A DNA stretch of 53,402 nucleotides, taken from the NCBI GenBank assembly GCA_943704425.1, contig CALSCP010002390.1, forward strand, positions 1 through 53,402, read 5' to 3'. The notes beneath the pieces were generated by a model that saw only the letters and a list, made by a program, of their open reading frames with translations, ran no database searches and was not told the DNA's origin. Each line of letters opens with the position of its first letter. Positions within the stretch are counted from its first letter, which is position 1. Positions 7,697 through 42,900 of the stretch are shown one piece after another. The position numbers and the translations under genes were made by a program. The stretch comes from Ministeria vibrans ATCC 50519 (Eukaryota > Protista > Filasterea).

Positions 7697-8736
7697 ATGC
7701 CTCGCCGACGATCCACGTCTGCTCCCTTGATGGTGTCTATTGATACTCTGGTACCGATCTAAAAAAAANNNNNNNNNNTCGAAATCGACTGTATTGGGAT
7801 TAGTATCGTATCAGAGTGACGCCAATTATACAATTGCACTTTCTCTTAGATGGACAACTTACCCCCAATCAGGGAAGTGGCGGGTCCCTCAAGCACGCAG
7901 ATGTCCACTGCGTCTGAACATCGCTCTTCAGGATCGGTCACGGCCACGCAAACGGGCGAGGAGGCGCGCGACTGGGGTTTCATTTTCGACCAGGTTGTCA
8001 ACACTGACCCGCACGACAAAGATCCCACTTTCACCGCTCGCGACCTCGCCGCCATGGGCCTGCCCATCTCAGCGCGCGAGACGTCCGCCATGGACATCGC
8101 AGCGACGTCGCAGGACCTGCTGGAGGGCCTGGAGGGGCTGCGCAGACAGTCGGGCGCTGTGCTGTCGCCATCGACGTCAACGCGAATGAGCCTGACAGTG
8201 CCGTCCACCACGGCCGCAACAGCACCCACTCCACGCACTCCTCGCGAGTTTCAGGACGCCATGCAGCGTCTCGCACAACTCCAAGACTTGCGTCAGAGCT
8301 TCCGCAAAGTCTCACTGCAAGAGACGACCGACCAGAGAGGAGAAGCAGCAGCAGCAGTCGAAGATGAAGACGAAGACGAAGACGAAGACGACGACGAGAC
8401 TAGCGCTACTCCAACAAGCACTCACAATATCAAAGAGGAGCGTCGCAAGAACCACGTGCTGAACGAACAGCGGCGCAGGCGCAACATGAAAGAGGCATAC
8501 GACACACTCGCGCGCATTGTCCCATCGCTTCAACACCGATCAACCCCAAAGGTCGACTAGTTTATTCTGACTCTCATCATCTCAACGTTTTGCATCTGTT
8601 GCTATAGACTCAACTCGAGATTCTCAATAAGACTCTGGACTACATTGGATACTTGAGGAGGCAGTGCGAGCGCGTGCATTTGGAGAACATTCAAGTCAAG
8701 GAAGCTTACTTGAAACTCGCAACGGAAAAGAAATAG
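7697..8736 (+). CDS. bHLH-leucine zipper transcription factor (Mlx/Max/Ino4-like). The start is uncertain because of the N gap at 7769-7778.
   Basis: ERRKNHVLNEQRRRRNMKEAYDTLARIVPSL...K|TQLEILNKTLDYIGYLRRQCERVHLEN: basic H-E-R motif, helix 2 after an intron, short zipper. Confidence 0.85.
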
Positions 8737-12495: not shown

Positions 12496-12579
12496 ATTNN
12501 NNNNNNNNNNNNNNNNNNNNNNNNNNNNNNNNNNNNNNNNNNNNNNNNNNNNNNNNNNNNNNNNNNNNNNNNNNNNNNN

Positions 12580-33777: not shown

Positions 33778-36700
33778 TCAGAGATCATCCGCTGATTTCA
33801 ATCCAATGGTTCCGCCACCCTTGCCTCCGTAAATGTCGCGTGTCGAGCTGCCCCACTCGTAGTTGGGTGCAGGTGCGCTGCTACCACCGCCACCGGGACC
33901 CTGCAACGTAAGCGCACCGCCCACCACCTGTCCGCCATCCTGTTCGTCCTCGAGTCCGTCGGCGGGCGCTCGCTGGCGCGCAAAGAAACCCATCTTCCAA
34001 GCAACCACAATGACAACAATAAGAAGGACCAACGAGCCGGCAACGGCACCCGCAACGGCCCCCGTGTTGATACCGCCGCTGGACGCACCCGTGTTTACAT
34101 TGTCCACCGTCGAGTCTTCGGTCACATTGTACGTTGCAATCTCCATGATGGACGGCAACATGTCGGGCCGGTCCGTCGACGAGACAACAGTCACATTGTA
34201 GTGCAGGGTAAAGTCATTGTCAATGGTGCTGGCAATGGTGCCAGCAACGACAAAGGAAGAGACGGTGCCGGGCGCACTACGCCCAAAGACACAGGCGGTG
34301 GTGGTGCTCGCCGACTGCAACTGGCACTTGGAGTCGACAATGCGCATGGTGTAGCGAGCACGGTGGGCGTCGTCAATGGGCGCCACAATGAGCACGCCCT
34401 CGTTGGCAAGCAGCGTGTTGGGGCCGTTGTTCACGACCGTCACCGTCATCGTAAAGTTGGACGAGGGGCCCACCAGCGCACTGGCGGGCGTCAGACGGAT
34501 CGACGAGTACTGCAGGTCGCTCGAGGGCACCGATAGCGTCACCGTCTTCGTGACTGCATTGTTGGTGAAGCTGCGCTCGGGCGTGCTCGAACTCGCCGTC
34601 ACCGAGCCCGTCAATGAGAACACCGTGCCAATAGGCGTGCCTGTTACGGGCACAAAGACCATCTGGACTGTCGAGAGTGCGTTGAGGGCCATGTCGCCAA
34701 AGCGAAAGGTCGAACCAGCAAACGTCACGTTGGCTGGCAGCGCCGCAAGCGTCGCGGTAACGTCGAGTGTGAGCAGCGTGGCATTGTACGGCACGGTGAG
34801 TGACGCGTTGGCAGCCAAAAAGGGACCCAGGTTGCGGACGGTGTAGGGCACGCGGAAGTTAGTGTCGGTGAAGGAAACGGGTGACGGGGAGGCAGCGCCC
34901 GCCGTCAGGGCAAGGTCACACGGCCGCGAGATGGTCGACGACAGGGTCACTTGGTTGTTGCTGGTGAACGAGTCGGTGGCAACGCTCTGCGCCGAGGCCG
35001 TCGACGAGAAGAAGCCCGACACGCTGCCCACAGTGTGTACCAAAACTACAACGATGTCGCTGCCGCCCTTGGCCAGCGAAATGCCCGTGCACGAAATGTC
35101 CCAGCCACCCGGCGAGCCAGAGCGCGCTGTGGGGACACACGTGCCGCGCGACGAATCAACCAACGCACCCGACGACGGCTGGGCCATTTCCAGGTTGATG
35201 GTGAAGGTGGCGGTCACACTGGTGGCGTCGTTGGCACCCGTGTTTCGAAGGGTCGCACGCAAGTAGATGTCATCGTTGAGGAAGATAGGCGGTGTCGGTG
35301 TGAGCGTGTACGACACGCTCACGTCGACCGTCTTGTCGATGGAGACGCGTGTGGTCAACGCATTGTTGCTCGACACGGTGTCGTCGCTGCTCGCGCCCGT
35401 CGACACCACAGCCGAAATGTTAAACGCATCCGCAGGCGACGCGGTCACAACAAAGGCCATGTCGAGAACCTTACGCTCGTTCAAGACGAGTCCGCCAAGT
35501 GTACACTCGACCGTGCCCGACGATGGGTTGGTGCACCCCGAGGGAAGTGCCTCGGCCGGGTTCACGCCTACGCTCGCCACGGGGAAGGTCACGGTGACAA
35601 GGCCCGAGTCGCCCACAAGCAGATCACTGGGTCCTTGGTTCACGGCAACCACACGTAACGTCAAGGTCTCGCCCTGCGTCGGCATGGCACTACCCGAGCT
35701 CGAGGTCACACGCAAATCGTTCATCGCAACATCTGAGCGACGACACACCGCCGGTCCGAACACAGATAGTTCACTCGTGGTCACGTTGACGGTGGCGTCG
35801 GCCCGCAGTGTAAACGTCGCGGGAATACGGTCAACGACGGTGGTGGTGGAAAGCACGCGCACCGTGTTGATCACCTCGATATTGGCGCCCTTGCCCACAC
35901 TGCCAAGCAGACATGTCACATAGGAGCCGGTGGTGTTGAGCACGCAGGGAGCGCCGTTGGAGACAAAGGCACGAATGAAAGAAACGCGCGTCAGGTCGAG
36001 CGTTTGCACAAGGACCACATTGGAGGCGGAGTTGGGACCCTTGCCGGTCACAATCGCACGGTAATTGTACAGGTTGCCGGCGCACACAATGCCGTCAAGT
36101 GCCGTGTTGTTGGTTGCCGTCATGGTGATGACCGCCGACGTCAAGTCAATGGTACGGCTCGTGGTGGTGATTGAGTTCTGACTGCTGTTCTGGTCGAGTG
36201 ACTGCGAAGCGGACGCCGAAAAGGTGATGCTGACTACGCTCGCGGCGAGACCCACATCAAAGCCAAAAGTGAGGTTCTGGAAGACGGTGTAGGCGGCGCT
36301 CACTTCAAGCGAGTCGGCCAGACACGACAAACGACCGACAACAGCGCTGCAGTCAAATCCTGACGCACCCGGGCCCGAAATATGGATACGACCAGTGTCC
36401 ATGGCAAACACACCGGTACTCAGCACCGCAGCAAACTCAATGCCAAACGCCGGCGAGGGTCCCACGTTACGGAAACGCACCATGGGTACAAAGAGACTAT
36501 TGCTGTCGCTGAGCAGTGCCACCGATGAAATCTGGTTACCGTCCTCGTCGATGGCCTCCAGTTGAATGGACGATTGATCGACTTCCAGGTCGGCCACAGC
36601 CACAACCGAGCCAGTCTCGGTAGCACTCCAGTCGGTCGCGGTGGCGTCGTACAGAGTGGTCGAGACGGGCAGGGCCACCGTCGCAGCAGTCGTAATGGTG

Positions 36701-37156
36701 GGCGACGGGGGCGCATTTGCCTCAGACAGGGGCTCGTAGTTGACGGTGATGACACGAGAGGCGCTGCTCGCAATGGTTCCAATAGAGGTACACACCACCG
36801 GATTTGAGGTAGTCACACATGAGAACTCGCCGACCGAATATGACACGGAAGACAGATTGAAAGAGGGATCAAGCGTGATGCTGACCGTGACCACATCGGT
36901 GATGATGGCAGGTCCGCCATTGCCAACGGTGACAGTGAACACAATAAGACCGGGACTCTCCGTGACAAATTGCTTCGAGCCAGCGCCAGTGTACACTCCC
37001 GCAACAGTCGTGTACAGATCGACATTAGGACGACCCGAAAGCGCCACTACACGTCCCGTTTTGCTGTTCGCTCCTGGTTGTCCAATCACCAAGTCAAGTG
37101 TCTACGAAATTTAATAACAACGTTGCAAAATCAGTAAGAATTTATTATTATATTAA

Positions 37157-37209
<53 letters not shown>

Positions 37210-39643
37210 TATTATCATTATTATTAAAAATTCTTACTTGACTGCTGCTGGAGAGATCGTCCAGGTAGACGCCGTTGGAGAGGGAGTAGCCAAAAAGACC
37301 GTTCGCAAGGTTACCCGTGATCGTCTGAGTGGCGGTCGTGGCAAGACCGGTGGGCGAGGCAGCGCCGAGGTAGATAAAAACCTTGCCGAGACCGCTGCTG
37401 GCGTACGGCGCACCCACCACCAGGTCCATGATGCCGTCCTGGTTGGTGTCGATGTGTGCAAGAGAATAGCCAAAGCGACCGGACGAGTCCGATCCGGAGA
37501 GGGTGGTACCAGCGGAAAGCCTCAGCGAAGTGGCACCCGATCGTTCACGGCCATAGTAAATGGTGACCTTGCCGGTCTCGGGTGCACCGTTGGTGAAGAA
37601 GGGCGAGCCGACAGCGAGATCGGGGTACGAGTCACCATCAAAGTCGGCAACATGCAACGACATGCCATAACCGGCGCCCATTTGAGAGCCGTCGCCGCGC
37701 CAGAGGCGTGCATTGCCGCTCGCCGAGGCACGCACCTCAACGTAGCCGGCATACGACGAGACGTACGAGGCACGCGGTGCGCCCACGACAAGATCCATGG
37801 CGTCGCTGCGAGAGCTTGCATCCGTTGTAAAGTAGCCCTTATCCATGGCCTGGCCATAGTAGATGTTGTTGGTATGATCGCCTGACGGCGGCGACACGAC
37901 AGTGCGACCCGCACCGGTATTGCCGGCACCCATGTTGTTGTTGGTGCCAAACTCGGTGTAGCCCTGCGACGAGCCGCCCTCCTGGCCGACTGACGAGACA
38001 ACGAGGGAGCCGTCGCTGTTAATGAGTGTAGCACTGCCAAATCCATTGTAGGCGTAGCGATTGGTCGAAGCAAGGTCACTGACGGTACCGGGAAACGAGG
38101 CGCCACCGGCAACGGAGTAGGCGCGACCGTCGTCGCTCGATTGACACGACGACGAAAAGCCGTAGTCGACGGTGGCGGTACCCTCGGCGAAACCCTGAAC
38201 GCGAACCTTGAGTTCCTTGTTGGTGACACCTGTGATCTCAATCCATTCGTCGCAGGGACAGCCAGTGCCCGTCTCAATGAAGGGACAGTAATGACCACTG
38301 TACTTGTAAGAGACGCCGTCGTAGCTGACCGTGTCGTGCTGACAGTGCGGCTGCGACGACGGTGCCGAGTTGACACAGTAGTTGCACAGCCAGTTGGGAA
38401 TGGCATAGCCGCCCGGAGGCAAGTTGTTCGTCTAAAATGGATGCATTTGGTGAGCTCACAACAACAACAAAAAAAAAATGTTCCGTTTTAACAATGATCA
38501 TATTTTCATACTTGATAGTAGCCGACAATGCGCTTGACGGTGCTGTCGGTAATGTCTTCAAGGTAGGTGTCAATATCGACGCCGCCGAGCGCCTTCATGC
38601 GCACAAAAACATCCTTGCGGTTGATGGGAATGATACCAACATCGATCCAGGCATTCAAGGCGATGAAGCTGGTAAAGGTACCGGTGCCTGACGAGCACTC
38701 GGAGCCCCAGTTGAACTCGGAGTCACTTGAACCGCCGCCTTCCGGTGCAAAGATGCGGCCATCGTCAGACGAGCAGCCTGCCGCGCTAATGAGCAGATCA
38801 TCGTACGAGTCGCCGTTGATGTTGCCCAGCGCCAGGTTTCGCCCAAAGTACGAGCGGTACTTGCAGGTGATGTCGCCATTGAGCGTTGGACCCACCGTTG
38901 CCTCAGGCTGCACAGCAACTCCCGGGTCTGTGACATCCTGGTACACATACACACGTCCCATCCATGTCTCCGAGTCGGTCGGGCTCGTTCCGGCCGAGCC
39001 GGAGTAGTTGGGCGCACTAACAACAACTTCCAGAAAGCTACACAACGTACAAAGGGAGAGAGAGAGAGAGGAAAAAAAAAAAAAATCAGTGACGAAGTGG
39101 CTCGTACGGCATCTACAGATGATGTCAGGTGTTGTTCGAGTACGGAATACACCCGTAGAGTGTGCTACGCCGGTGTTGAGGCGACAAGACACGCCCACAG
39201 AGCGGTAGTAAGGCGGAAAGTGGATACGGACGACGACAGGTCAAAAAAAAAAAAAAGGCTCTTTTCTCTTTTTGGTTTCCCATTGTGAACAAAGGACACT
39301 GAGCTCTCAGTAGGTGTGTACAGCGTTAAACAAGAATGAGGCGAAAAGCGGGGGCGCGGGCAGGGAAAAGACGGCAAAACAGGACGGATGCAAAGCATTT
39401 CTGATTTCTCTCTCTCTCTCTCTCTCACTCTCTCTCGAGAGAGAGACGATTTTGATTGCGTTTTTTTATTTCTTACTTTGCAGTGCCGGTGACTTGCCCG
39501 ACAACGATGGACGAGCCGTAGAGAGAGTCGGCTTGGCTTCCGTCATGGCTCCACAGAGGCGAAGCGAGATTGTCCTGAAGGACTCCGCGAGAGCCTGTCG
39601 CAAAGAGCGCCAGCACGCCCGCTGCAACAATCAAGAGTCGCAT
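33778..39643 (-). CDS. Integrin alpha subunit: 7-blade FG-GAP propeller with an inserted domain, about 7 DUF11/Ig-like leg domains, TM, KMGFFAR; 4 exons (about 39643-39477, 39037-38512, 38431-37238, 37101-33778)
   Basis: Signal peptide; FG-GAP repeats with Ca2+ loops (NINGDSYDDLLISA, DFDGDSYPDLAVGSP, DTNQDGIMDLVVGAP); repeated N-x-G-P Ig domains; LVLLIVVIVVAWKMGFFAR. Confidence 0.93.
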
Positions 39644-39966
39644 AGGGACAGAAGAAAGGAAAAGAGAAAAATTGATCAGTTGTGTCTTTGGAGTTTGAAG
39701 TTTTAAACTTCTGATGATACCGCGAGACACACAGGCCCGAAATGGAACAAAAGGAAAGCGGTGTTATCCATGACGTCAATTCGAGAGAAATATTGCCTCT
39801 GCGACTCTTTTTGCCCCCGTATCATATCATATATAGCTATTAACTCCAATTAGGAGCTATTGGTTGCAGATTGAGGGCCAGACGAAGAGGAAGTGAAAAA
39901 AGGGAACGATGATCAGAACTTTCAGAAGAGTTGAGCCTCATTTTTATTCGTCCCCCTGCGCCGACC
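39644..39966. promoter_or_regulatory. Probable bidirectional promoter shared by integrin alpha and beta
   Basis: 323 bp between divergent predicted ATGs (39643 minus, 39967 plus). Confidence 0.7.
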
Positions 39967-42900
39967 ATGGTAGCACGTCGTGTTTTTATGGCCATCATAG
40001 CTGCCGCCATGATCAGCAGTGTCTGTGGACAAGCTTGCTCAACGTACACGACATGCGATACGTGTCTGGGACAGGTAAATAGTGAGTGTGATCTCTCTCT
40101 CTCTCTCTCTCTCTCGCGCGCTCTCTGCGCTCTCTCTTTCGCTTCCTTCCATCTCCCGTGGCACTTCTTCTCTCCCTCCAATCCGCATATACTAACCCCC
40201 TCGGTGTGCTACCATTGATGACTCGTGCGACGCCCATTAGGCCTTGCGACAGTCAGAATGCGACGAGTTCTTCTTTCGTTTTTTTTTTCTCGTCCTTTCA
40301 TCCTCTACCGCCCCTTGTTTTCAATATGTTCTGTGTCGTACGTCCTGGCATGTTGCGGACGTTGTGAGGGAGAGACGAAGGCAAAGCAGAGTCTTTCTTT
40401 TTTGCTCAGAGAAGTCGGGAAACGATTCGCGGAAANNNNNNNNNNTTCTTTTTTTTTTTTTTTTTTTTTCTCTTCTCTCTGGTCATAATTTCATCTGCTG
40501 CCATGTCGAAAGTGGACGTTGCGCACCGTGCTGCTGCTCTGAGTGGGGCTCTTGATGGGTGTTTTGTGTGCTGCGTGTCTTTCGTTGTCCGCCGTCTCAT
40601 GTCTTGTCTCTTGGGCAGGTCAACACGGCCACTTCACCCAACTCCGTTTGTGGCTGGTGCGTCACCAGCACAACCGCCTACTGCTCGAGCTCTTCGTCGG
40701 GATGTGTCTCGTATGAAGACTACAAGGTACGCACGACGCAAGAGAACACGATAATGAGAATGCATAATCATCACCTTACCTGTCTGTGTTATGATGATGG
40801 GTCACACAGGTGAATGGCGTCGCCGGCAGCACTGTCGCCGTCACGGCCAACGACACCGCTCTGGAAGCCTACCCGCAAGAATTCAATGTCTACTTGCGCA
40901 AGCGTACGACTACCATACTTGTTTGTTTCGTTCTTTTTGTTTTGCTCCGTTTCTAAAAAGTCTTTTTGTCTTTGTCTTTTTTTTTGTCTTCATAATAATA
41001 TTAATAATAATTATTATTATTTTCTTATTCCTAAATATTTTCTTAATTTCTTCTTCTTCTTCTTCTAATTATATTCTTTTTGTAGACGAACCTGTTTCGC
41101 TGACAATTAGTGTCAAGAGTCAGGGATGCAAGAAACTCGACTTGTACTACCTGATGGATTTGTCGCAGTCGATGCTCAACGATAAAAACACACTGGAGAG
41201 TCTGGCGACGGATCTGTCAAACAAAGCGACAGAGTTGTGCGAGGCAGGCTGTCCCGGCGGTGCACCCGCCGACTGTGTCTCGCTTGGCTTTGGCTCCTTC
41301 ATTGACAAGCCCATCTCGCCCTTTGGCTACTGGACACAAACGACCAACGAGGCGCTTACGGGCCCGCTTCCTGGTCTGCCATTCTTCGAGACGTCGTCGC
41401 CTGCATGGGACTACGTCTGGCGTAACTCTGCGCCTCTTCTGGCCGCCAACAGTGGTGGTACGGATGCATTTCGTCTTGGTGTGAGCAACTCGGAGACACG
41501 TGAGAACATAGACCAGCCCGAGTCGGGTCTGGAGGCGCTTTTGCAAGTGGCCGCGTGCGACACCGAGGTCGGCTGGCGCTCCGATGCGCGACGCATTGTT
41601 TTTTACGCGTCCGACGCTGACTTTCACATTGCTGGCGACGGCGCACGTGCCGGTATTTACGCCAAAAATGATGGTACTTGCTACGTCACGTCGCCCAGTG
41701 GCACCGACACAGTCAAGAACCGCGAGATTGACGCTGCCAGCATTCGCCAGGACTACCCCTCCATCAGTCAATTGAGTCAGTCGCTCATTGGCTCGAACAT
41801 TGTGCCCATTTTTGCCTACAAGGAAACGACCCTCCTTGCCGAGGCCAAAAACTCCCTCGTCTATCCCAACCTTGTGACTCAGCTAGGCTTTGGTTTCCAC
41901 GGTCAGCTCGCCGAGTCGTCGGGCAACGTTGTGGCGCTTCTCGAGTCCGCCTACGCCTCCATTTCAACAACCATTCGTTTGGAGACTCAACGCAACGGCA
42001 ACGAGGCGCTTGTCTCGTCCATTTCGCCGTCGCAGTTTACCAACATTGCAACGGACGTGGTATACTCCTTCACCGTCACCCTTGAGTACGACGGCACCAC
42101 CGCCTACGGCACCAATCTTCCCGTGGTCTTCACGCCCCTCGGCTTTAACCAGGTGACCGTGCACGTGACCACTCAGCCCGACGCCACCTGCTCCTGTGCT
42201 TCCAACTCCGACTACTGTCCCGCCCTTCACTGTGGCAACAGCGGCTCCTGCGAATGCGGCAAATGCACCTGCCCAACGGGCTCCTCGGGGGACAATTGTG
42301 AATGTTCCAACGATGTCACTCCCTGTCGCCAGGGCCAGACCACTTGTGGCGGTCGTGGTGTCTGTGAGTGTGGCGTATGTGTCTGTGATGCGGTAAGCGG
42401 AAAAACGATTATAATAATATTATTATTATTTTATTACTTTTATTAATTTTTCTTTTTGTTTCGTTTGGTAGGGTTTTACCGGTCAATTTTGTGACTGTTC
42501 CACCGCATCGTGTCCCACGTCGCTGACGGCGCTCGGAGATTGTTCAGGCAATGGAATTTGTGAGTGTGGTACTTGCAACTGTACCAATGGCTACACTGGT
42601 TTTGACTGCAGTTGCCCACCAAACGACCCGTCTCAGCAGTGCAACGCGACCATTTGCGGCAATTTTGGTGCATCGACGGGCTTTTGTGCGACGGCGTCGG
42701 GCCAGTGCAACACGCAACAGTGCGAGTGTGTGTCCGGCTGGCAAATAGACAGCAATGGTGCGTGTTCGTGCCAGCTACTCCCTTGCCCTCTTGGTCCCAA
42801 CGACCAACCGTGTAACTCTCAAGGTACCTGCGGCTGTGGTGGGCTTTGTCAGTGCAACGCTGGCTGGACCAGTACCGCGGCGAATGCTGCGGACGGAAGC

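What the first reader, a model, noticed from the sequence alone, without database searches (positions are those of the whole stretch)
38123..38772. Non-vWA domain inserted on the ligand-facing side of the integrin alpha propeller, bracketed by duplicated SSDDGR
Seen: right after the second FG-GAP (…DDLLISAAGCSSDDGRIF) about 185 aa of non-propeller sequence intervene (GTGTFTSFIALNAWIDVGIIPINRKDVFVRMKALGGVDIDTYLED…YDGVSYKYSGHY…EWIEITGVTNKELKVRVQGFAEGTATVDYGF). The blade then resumes at a second SSDDGRAYSV. The two SSDDGR copies use different codons. Established: some animal alphas carry an alpha-I (vWA) domain between blades 2 and 3 that takes over ligand binding. This insert has no DxSxS and looks like a beta-sandwich; it reminds me of a domain in large proteins of marine bacteria (unverified). 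Inference: an independently acquired ligand-binding module, analogous to alpha-I, possibly for prey or substrate recognition.
Basis: partly seen in the sequence, partly recalled or inferred. Interest (0 to 1): 0.85.

Follow-up and report, generated by a model that had tools for sequence, protein, structure and literature searches.

The report
Jelly-roll domain inserted in integrin alpha
A marine single-celled relative of animals makes an integrin alpha chain whose propeller head carries an extra, expressed beta-sandwich domain of a bacterial-type family, a second and independent way (besides the vertebrate vWA 'I domain') of grafting a likely binding module into an integrin head.

Summary
On the minus strand, an integrin alpha gene has 178 residues between two SSDDGR copies (38772-38755 and 38140-38123). 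An 80-nt GT-AG intron (38511-38432) splits this stretch.

The insert is in the mature mRNA. An intron-less contig (L003/P0001) and RNA contigs from three studies all keep it and remove only the intron.

It is neither propeller blades nor a vWA domain. It is one complete copy of an unnamed domain of about 150 aa:
- 224 relatives at E<=1e-3, mostly as tandem pairs on secreted hydrolases.
- Found in marine bacterial MAGs and in a haptophyte.
- It folds as a 10-strand jelly roll. The closest solved structure is the ADAMTS13 spacer (Z 11.3), then PPC/collagen-binding domains.

In this 29.7-Mb genome the domain occurs only here. None of 120 FG-GAP/integrin relatives carries it.

It sits inside FG-GAP repeat 2, not between blades 2 and 3. 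It is bracketed by a duplicated host "loop + strand 3" segment. If the second copy forms strand 3, which I favour but did not show, the domain hangs from the W2 beta2-beta3 loop, a ligand-pocket loop in animal integrins.

A ligand-binding role is inferred, not shown. I rate it a new variant of a known kind.

The parts
33778..39811 (-). Integrin alpha gene. Exons seen in cDNA: 39811-39721, 39622-39477, 39037-38512, 38431-37238 and 37101 onward; the last exon runs to the stop at 33778. The product has 7 FG-GAP blades, DUF11/CLIPPER-type leg repeats, a TM segment and a KMGFFARQ tail.
   Evidence: blastn of cDNA contig L003 to the window; RNA contigs; Pfam; ORF list; best PDB sequence hits are integrin alpha-IIb, alpha-V, alpha-5 and alpha-6 propellers, with blades 5-7 in register.
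38755..38775 (-). Cys140 followed by the first SSDDGR copy (38772-38755). This is the end of strand 2 and the native-type beta2-beta3 loop of blade W2. It is followed by IFAPEGGGSSDSE, a decayed strand-3-like stretch and then a Gly/Ser linker.
   Evidence: BLAST to FG-GAP relatives runs through this copy as loop + strand 3, and P0004 repeats natively read YSSDDGRVY.
38512..38715 (-). N-terminal half of the inserted jelly-roll domain, from FNWG to the end of the exon.
   Evidence: Family profile match of 77 bits in the own-genome search; HMM built from relatives gives 194 bits over the full length; strands 1-5 of the model.
38432..38511 (-). 80-nt GT-AG intron, phase 0, inside the variable central loop of the inserted domain.
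   Evidence: Skipped in L003 and in RNA contigs of runs X1, X2 and X6; present in DNA run X18.
38156..38431 (-). C-terminal half of the inserted jelly-roll domain, ending at VDYGF. It includes a lineage-specific Cys-rich loop and the family's YSG and E-x-I-x-I-x-G motifs.
   Evidence: (84 bits).
38123..38146 (-). Cys323-Gln followed by the second SSDDGR copy (38140-38123). It leads straight into AYSVAGG, the better strand-3 candidate, and then canonically on to strand 4 and blade W3.
41157..41171 (+). Context only: the MIDAS motif DLSQS of the divergently transcribed integrin beta gene.

Best explanation
SHOWN.
- The 178 residues between the two SSDDGR copies are a real, transcribed, in-frame part of an integrin alpha chain.
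- They form one complete copy of an unnamed jelly-roll beta-sandwich domain. Its sequence hallmarks are FDWG-x2-C-x2-G-x-G-x-F, VG-x-IP-x-GK, DVD-x-QL, YSGYNG, E-x-I-x-I-x-G-x-TNR and GY-x-x-G-x-A-x-V-x-Y.
- This family is a distant relative of the ADAMTS spacer and of PPC-type domains.
- Elsewhere the family occurs mostly as tandem pairs fused to secreted hydrolases of marine bacteria, and in a haptophyte. In this genome it occurs only here.

INFERRED.
1. A single copy was inserted long ago into blade W2 of the propeller, probably from a bacterial-type donor. The event duplicated about 18 residues of host 'beta2-beta3 loop + strand 3 + turn'. Signs of age: the insert's GC3 matches the rest of the gene, an intron has since arisen inside it, and the two flank copies share no DNA similarity.
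2. The second copy (GRAYSVAG, continuous with strand 4) serves as strand 3. The first copy (GRIFAPEG, then Gly/Ser) has become the N-linker. Cys140 and Cys323 may staple the base of the insert.
3. [quoted passage not shown]
4. There it works as an added ligand- or substrate-binding module (surface polymer, glycan or protein, possibly of prey bacteria). It supplements the beta-subunit MIDAS site rather than replacing it.
For: Transcription and splicing: (three independent RNA studies plus a JGI contig).

Domain identity:
- 224 relatives at E<=1e-3 and 76 at <=1e-10 among 1.84 billion representatives.
- An HMM built from relatives matches the insert end to end at 194 bits.
- All 6 invariant and 10 near-invariant family columns are kept in the insert.

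Fold:
- AF2 model with pLDDT 76 and 10 strands.
- The same strands appear again in the 660-aa head model, even though misaligned integrin rows lay over the insert columns.
- Best structural matches: ADAMTS13 spacer at Z 11.3 and Foldseek E 4e-4.
- 14 of 52 family members hit Pfam ADAMTS_spacer1 and 3 of 52 hit PPC.

Accessory-module context: family members are fused to Metallophos, GDSL lipase, subtilase, transglutaminase, PhoD and EEP domains. 114 of 146 proteins carry exactly two copies.

Taxa: bacterial MAGs and Prymnesium.

Uniqueness: the family profile hits only this locus in G000; 0 of 120 FG-GAP/integrin relatives have the domain; 0 of 149 family proteins have a propeller.

Position:
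- Seven FG-GAP repeats, with blades 5-7 in register with alpha-IIb.
- The flanks align to loop + strand 3 of other FG-GAP repeats.

Composition: GC3 is 0.72 in the insert, 0.68 in the propeller and 0.74 in the leg.
Against: - No ligand, binding site or phenotype is known for any member of the family, so function rests on analogy.
- Geometry is unresolved. Blades 1-2 of my head model have pLDDT of about 30.
- The first SSDDGR copy is itself a good FG-GAP loop + strand-3 motif. If it forms strand 3, the domain hangs from the beta3-beta4 turn on the lower or outer rim, away from the ligand site.
- Both copies keep six identical residues through different codons. This suggests both are constrained, which a mere linker would not need.
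- The jelly roll holds an odd number of cysteines (7), so the C140-C323 staple is only one possible pairing.
- The donor is unknown. On a tree of 213 domain copies the insert sits on a very long branch without supported neighbours.
- No orthologue with or without the insert was found, so conservation cannot be judged.
Confidence: 0.6

Rival explanations
1. Same domain, different geometry. The first SSDDGR-GRIF segment is the true strand 3. The jelly roll then hangs from the beta3-beta4 turn on the lower or outer rim of blade 2, and the second copy adds a fifth strand. The domain would act away from the ligand groove, for example in lateral (cis) contacts, clustering, or contact with the leg.
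For: The first copy is contiguous with strand 2 through a native-type loop. It aligns with loop + strand 3 + turn of FG-GAP repeats in relatives, e.g. P0004 ...SSDDGRVY and P0035 ...GRAYVYLGGSS. Both copies are conserved at the amino-acid level despite different codons.
Against: - The first copy has Pro at the position where the other blades have a hydrophobic residue (GRIFAPEG against GRVYVYQD, GKVIIYYG, GKVFIYLG and GRVVALSG). It runs into a Gly/Ser-rich stretch that is disordered in both models.
- The second copy keeps the G-R-x-h-x-h-x-G pattern and is continuous with strand 4.
- Large insertions in integrin propellers are known on the upper loops, not in beta3-beta4 turns. This last point is my own knowledge.
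Confidence: 0.3
2. The domain is a tolerated passenger, or a purely structural cap. It either does nothing, or it shields or stiffens the alpha/beta groove. It does not bind an external ligand.
For: No binding function is known for the family. The insert is very diverged, on a long branch. It has a lineage-specific Cys-rich loop in place of the family's short loop.
Against: - The reading frame is intact over 534 nt.
- All invariant family columns are retained and the profile match is full-length at 194 bits.
- Codon composition is ameliorated.
- Expression is stable in three RNA data sets.
All of these point to long-term purifying selection on a folded domain.
Confidence: 0.2
3. Artefact: a retained intron, a misassembly, or a bacterial contaminant fused in silico.
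For: The family is otherwise mostly bacterial. The organism is grown with bacteria; this is my own knowledge of filasterean cultures.
Against: - One DNA contig spans 37233-39044 without a break.
- RNA contigs from three studies run from blade 1 through the insert into blades 3-7 and carry a spliceosomal intron inside the insert.
- The JGI contig L003 shows the same.
- GC3 is like the host gene.
Confidence: 0.01
4. The segment is ordinary extra propeller blades or a degenerate vWA (alpha-I) domain.
For: None beyond its position near the alpha-I site.
Against: - No FG-GAP or VWA Pfam hit in the insert.
- The model is an all-beta 10-strand sandwich.
- The best structural matches are jelly rolls.
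- The full-length profile match is to a non-propeller, non-vWA family.
- There is no DxSxS in the insert (sequence).
Confidence: 0.01

Closest known systems
Alpha-I (alpha-A, vWA) domain of chordate integrin alpha chains (alpha1, 2, 10, 11, L, M, X, D, E)
   Same: A whole globular domain of about 180-200 aa is spliced into the N-terminal third of the 7-bladed propeller, in the blade 2 region, so both its ends leave and re-enter the propeller close together. In animals it is the ligand-binding unit (PMC3192720).
   Different: - The fold is a jelly-roll beta-sandwich, not a Rossmann-like vWA, and there is no MIDAS.
- The site is inside repeat 2, between its GAP-equivalent and strand 3 or strand 4, not between blades 2 and 3.
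- The insert is flanked by a duplicated host segment.
- The lineage is a unicellular holozoan, so the acquisition was independent.
ADAMTS spacer domain (Pfam PF05986; ADAMTS13 spacer, PDB 3GHM/3GHN/3VN4)
   Same: It is the best structural match: Z 11.3, 115 residues aligned, rmsd 3.4, and Foldseek E 4e-4. 14 of 52 relatives of the insert hit the Pfam model, and one (P0123) scores above the gathering cut-off. In ADAMTS13 the spacer is a substrate-recognition exosite; that is my own knowledge.
   Different: The insert itself gives no Pfam hit. Identity is about 12%. There is no preceding ADAMTS Cys-rich domain or TSR context. The conserved motifs differ.
Unnamed tandem jelly-roll family on secreted hydrolases of marine bacteria and a haptophyte (e.g. 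P0123, P0124, P0128, P0130, P0288)
   Same: Clear sequence homology: E as low as 1e-24, 26-42% identity, and a full-length profile match. All invariant positions are shared.
   Different: In the family the domain is terminal and usually doubled (114 of 146 proteins). Here it is a single copy, internal to a propeller blade, with a long Cys-rich central loop and an intron.
PPC / collagen-binding domains of bacterial collagenases and the C-terminal jelly rolls of subtilases (PF04151; ColG CBD 1NQD; Tk-SP 3AFG; Csp proteases)
   Same: Same general jelly-roll architecture, Z 8-10. PPC was the language-model lead. 3 of 52 relatives hit PF04151. These domains are accessory binding or stabilising modules of secreted enzymes.
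   Different: They score lower than the ADAMTS spacer, and Z of 8-9 is near the background for such folds. The insert gives no Pfam PPC hit.
Ministeria vibrans ITGA paralogue with 3 detected blades, TM and GFFKR-like tail (Kang et al. 2020, bioRxiv 10.1101/2020.04.29.069435)
   Same: Probably this very gene, if the genome is M. vibrans. The description fits in having few Pfam-detected blades, a TM segment, a tail motif and no predicted signal peptide in the transcript.
   Different: The survey lists domain architecture only and mentions no inserted domain.

Membership tests
Integrin alpha subunit (host protein) | Seven FG-GAP blades forming the N-terminal propeller | tested here: met
   Seven FG..GAP-type repeats can be read in P0001 residues 35-650. 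Pfam FG-GAP scores 103 bits with 4 stretches. The top PDB sequence hits are integrin alpha-IIb, alpha-V, alpha-5 and alpha-6, with blades 5-7 in register.
Integrin alpha subunit (host protein) | Ca2+-binding D-x-D/N-x-D-G-x-x-D hairpins in the C-terminal blades | tested here: met
   DFDGDSYPD in blade 5 and DTNQDGIMD in blade 6 align to the alpha-IIb Ca sites. Blade 2 has NINGDSYDD. Blade 7 lacks the motif.
Integrin alpha subunit (host protein) | Single C-terminal TM segment followed by a KxGFFxR tail | tested here: met
   The ORF 33778-37092 ends with ...VVAWKMGFFARQRAP... after a hydrophobic stretch.
Integrin alpha subunit (host protein) | Thigh/calf legs (Pfam Integrin_alpha2, Integrin_A_Ig) | tested here: not met
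   The leg gives only PF01345 (DUF11/CLIPPER, 85 bits, 6 stretches) and a weak CARDB hit. It is Ig-like, but not the animal leg families.
Alpha-I (vWA) inserted domain | vWA fold with a DxSxS MIDAS | tested here: not met
   No Pfam VWA hit. The model is all-beta. No DxSxS in residues 147-324.
Alpha-I (vWA) inserted domain | Insertion between blades 2 and 3 | tested here: not met
   The insert follows the GAP-equivalent (SAAG) of repeat 2. It is followed by a strand-3-type segment and strand 4 before blade 3 begins at NGFGSA.
ADAMTS_spacer1 (PF05986) | Pfam model at or above the gathering score | tested here: not met
   The insert gives no hit even at E<=10. Among relatives, 14 of 52 hit at E<0.01 with a best of 2.6e-6, and P0123 scores 31.6 bits against a cut-off of 23.6.
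ADAMTS_spacer1 (PF05986) | 10-strand jelly-roll fold like the ADAMTS13 spacer | tested here: met
   The model has 10 strands. 3ghn_A residues 556-682 match at Z 11.3, rank 1 of 48,161 chains. Foldseek rank 1 is 3vn4.
Unnamed tandem jelly-roll family (FDWG...YSGYNG...) | Full-length profile match and conserved motif residues | tested here: met
   194 bits over HMM positions 2-181 of 182. All invariant columns G46, S132, G133, E149, I151 and G155 are shared. phmmer E as low as 1e-24.
Unnamed tandem jelly-roll family (FDWG...YSGYNG...) | Usual architecture: two tandem copies at an end of a secreted enzyme | tested here: not met
   There is a single copy, internal to a propeller blade. 114 of 146 relatives have two copies.
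PPC (PF04151) | Pfam model or clear structural match | tested here: inconclusive
   No Pfam hit for the insert. 3 of 52 relatives hit. Z is 8.1-8.7 to ColG/ColH CBD and the B. anthracis PPC, which is near the background level. The atlas lead scored 0.92.

The most novel reading that the evidence does not exclude
A unicellular relative of animals has converged on the alpha-I solution. A jelly-roll adhesin module of bacterial origin, captured by horizontal transfer, was grafted onto the ligand face of an integrin. It serves as the primary recognition head, for example for prey bacteria or particle surfaces. The two conserved acidic SSDDGR linkers would act as hinges, or as an intrinsic ligand that relays occupancy to the intact beta-subunit MIDAS, as the C-linker glutamate does in alpha-I integrins.
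Probability: 0.12. Interest if true: 0.85.

Novelty: new variant of a known kind. Interest (0 to 1): 0.62.

Why it matters
The alpha-I domain is the only whole-domain insertion known in integrin alpha propellers. It is treated as a chordate innovation that moved ligand binding onto a plug-in module.

A second, unrelated plug-in would show three things if confirmed. It has a different fold, sits at a neighbouring site, and occurs in a unicellular holozoan.
- The blade-2 region of the propeller is a recurrent docking point for new binding modules.
- Pre-metazoan integrins were already diversifying their ligand range by capturing domains.
- Bacterial-type accessory domains can be recruited into the core of a eukaryotic adhesion receptor.

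It also gives a first eukaryotic, membrane-receptor context for a large unnamed jelly-roll family that is remotely related to the ADAMTS spacer. That offers a handle for finding what the family binds.

Tried and rejected
- **Joined spliced model.** I did not type or join the spliced model. The exons were searched apart, by reference. The continuous insert was taken only from the natural intron-less contig L003, by reference.
- **Pfam and NCBIfam on the insert.** Nothing.
- **phmmer of the insert against PDB.** Only noise.
- **Family profile against PDB.** 'CpcN' (8imn) scores E 2.8e-5, but this is the sum of five 2-6-bit matches to helical phycobilisome-linker repeats. I rejected it as spurious.
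- **Long proteins (860-2730 aa) with the insert.** Only P0001 itself.
- **Metagenome scan for close relatives of the insert.** None.
- **Genome scan with alignment A1.** A scan with P0288 gave three bacterial MAGs.
- **Own-genome search for paralogues.** No paralogue of the domain or of blades 1-2. No pre-insertion state is therefore available.
- **Head model (660 aa, alignment A3).**
  - MAFFT put animal blades 1-3 under the insert columns.
  - Blades 1-2 came out at pLDDT of about 30, so the model cannot place the insert.
  - A second mixed alignment (A4) was worse and was not used.
- **Tree of 213 domain copies.** The insert lies on a very long branch with no supported sister and no clear affinity to N- or C-copies. 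The donor is not identifiable.
- **Complex prediction.** Not used. It would not report where the insert sits, and blades 1-2 lack alignment depth.
- **Organism name.** It could not be verified with these tools.
Full report
**What is there**

On the minus strand of the window lies an integrin alpha gene. A JGI contig of 4777 nt (L003, protein P0001, 99.8% identical) has no introns. It aligns to the window as exons 39811-39721, 39622-39477, 39037-38512, 38431-37238 and 37101-34292.

The product has these features:
- Seven FG-GAP repeats.
- Calcium-loop motifs in blades 5 and 6 that align in register with human alpha-IIb.
- A long leg of DUF11/CLIPPER-type repeats.
- A TM segment and a KMGFFARQ tail.

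A beta gene with an intact MIDAS motif DLSQS lies head to head with it.

**The observation**

- The two SSDDGR copies are at 38772-38755 and 38140-38123, with different codons (5 of 18 bases differ).
- The 178 residues between them are split by an 80-nt GT-AG intron (38511-38432).
- SSDDGR is the only repeated hexamer in the protein besides the FG-GAP core.
- The similarity of the flanks extends to about 18 residues, with score 49 against 24.7 +/- 4.9 for shuffles.

**Is it expressed**

Yes. RNA-derived contigs from three separate studies, one of them a polyA library from a marine sample, run from blade 1 through the insert into blades 3-7. The only joint inside is 38431|38512. A DNA run contains the intron. 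No contig skips the insert. Contigs can hide rare isoforms.

**What the insert is**

Pfam, NCBIfam and PDB sequence searches of the insert give nothing. An exhaustive HMMER search of 1.84 billion representatives gives 224 relatives at E<=1e-3 and 76 at <=1e-10.

The relatives share a domain of about 150 aa with strong motifs. It is usually present twice in tandem (114 of 146 proteins). It sits at one end of proteins that also carry a Metallophos, GDSL-lipase, subtilase, transglutaminase, PhoD or EEP domain. Members occur in bacterial MAGs (Deltaproteobacteria, Sulfurovum, SAR202) and in the haptophyte Prymnesium.

A profile built from the relatives alone matches the insert end to end at 194 bits. 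Every invariant family column is kept.

With a 52-row alignment AF2 gives a 10-strand beta-sandwich (pLDDT 76). The low-confidence parts are the N-linker and a lineage-specific Cys-rich central loop.

Structural matches:
- Best in an all-against-all comparison: the spacer domain of ADAMTS13 (Z 11.3).
- Next: the jelly rolls of Csp and Tk-SP subtilases, GOLD domains and collagenase CBD/PPC domains (Z 8-10).
- Foldseek agrees.

Fourteen of 52 relatives hit Pfam ADAMTS_spacer1 and three hit PPC. The insert is therefore a diverged member of an unnamed family in the ADAMTS-spacer/PPC-like jelly-roll class. It is neither blades nor vWA.

**How unusual it is**

- In the 29.7-Mb genome the family profile hits only this locus.
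- None of 120 FG-GAP/integrin relatives, including 35 or more animal integrins, carries the domain.
- None of the 149 best family members has a propeller.
- No other long protein with the insert exists in the 5.8-billion-cluster collection.

An earlier AI note gives the genome as Ministeria vibrans. I could not verify this. The marine RNA/DNA runs are consistent with it. So is a 2020 survey that lists an M. vibrans ITGA with few detected blades, a TM segment and a GFFKR-like tail, and mentions no inserted domain.

**Where it sits**

In integrin propellers the Ca-type loop joins strands 1 and 2. The 'GAP' is in strand 2. The following G-[RK]-x-h-x-h is strand 3. These assignments are established knowledge and were not tested here.

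The sequence runs in this order:
1. ...NINGDSYDD-LLISAAG-C-SSDD-GRIFAPEG-GGSSDSE
2. the jelly roll
3. SSS-C-Q-SSDD-GRAYSVAG-GAS...
4. strand 4
5. blade 3

Both SSDDGR-led segments align to 'loop + strand 3 + turn' of FG-GAP repeats in relatives. One relative natively reads YSSDDGRVY. So the host segment was duplicated around the insert.

The second copy keeps the hydrophobic pattern and is continuous with strand 4. The first has Pro in the strand and runs into a Gly/Ser stretch that is disordered in both models. I therefore favour (about 0.7) the second copy as strand 3.

On that reading the domain lies in the W2 beta2-beta3 loop. [quoted passage not shown] The alternative, with the first copy as strand 3, puts the domain on the lower or outer rim.

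My head model could not decide. Blades 1-2 had no alignment depth and came out at pLDDT of about 30. The insert again folded as the same jelly roll.

The alpha-I domain of chordates is inserted between blades 2 and 3 (PMC3192720). That is a neighbouring but different site.

**History**

- The insert is not bounded by introns. One intron lies inside it.
- GC3 equals that of the host gene.
- The flank copies share no DNA similarity.
- The domain sits on a very long branch.

Together these point to an old event. The donor was probably of bacterial type, by horizontal transfer. Loss of a eukaryotic donor gene cannot be excluded.

**Function**

Nothing is known experimentally for the family. Three things make an added binding module the most likely reading:
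- The family's consistent role as a doubled accessory module on secreted hydrolases.
- Its kinship in fold to substrate- or collagen-recognition jelly rolls.
- Its probable place on the ligand face.

Because the beta MIDAS is intact, the insert probably supplements the canonical site rather than replacing it.

**Verdict**

The finding is a new variant of a known kind: an integrin alpha with a non-vWA inserted domain. Its geometry and ligand remain open.

Noticed in passing
window 39623-39720 (-), ATG at 39643-39641: The cDNA contig L003 splices out a 98-nt GT-AG intron that contains the only good start codon and signal peptide (MRLLIVAAGVLALFATGS...). The spliced form has stops upstream and no in-frame ATG. 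The gene may therefore use intron retention or an internal start site. This fits the published remark that no signal peptide was predicted for M. vibrans ITGA transcripts.
   Followed up: partly
window 33778-37092 (-): The alpha leg is built from DUF11/CLIPPER-type repeats (PF01345, 6 stretches) plus a weak CARDB hit, not from the animal thigh/calf families. Its best non-self relative is a bacterial-style multi-Ig protein, P0002.
   Followed up: partly
window 37102-37237 (-): This 136-nt intron is almost pure AAT/AAC repeat. If retained, it reads through in frame as a poly-Asn tract before a stop.
   Followed up: no
L003 4757-4777: The JGI contig ends in Illumina adapter sequence (AGATCGGAAGA). 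The public contig is therefore truncated by untrimmed adapter, and the called protein P0001 ends artificially.
   Followed up: no
window 40436-40445, also 7769-7778 and 12499-12579: There are runs of N (assembly gaps). One lies in the alpha/beta intergenic region, just upstream of the beta gene.
   Followed up: no
L004 7547-9830 and L004 4001-5830: In a 198-kb environmental contig, two neighbouring genes both carry the tandem jelly-roll module. One is a Metallophos enzyme and the other a phospholipase-D-type enzyme. This suggests the module is shared among co-located secreted hydrolases.
   Followed up: no
P0001 versus window: The environmental and RNA copies differ from the window at a few sites. 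Examples are G>A at 37491 and 37563 and A>G at 38653, giving amino-acid changes T/I, S/L, D/N and V/A. This is strain-level polymorphism rather than editing.
   Followed up: no
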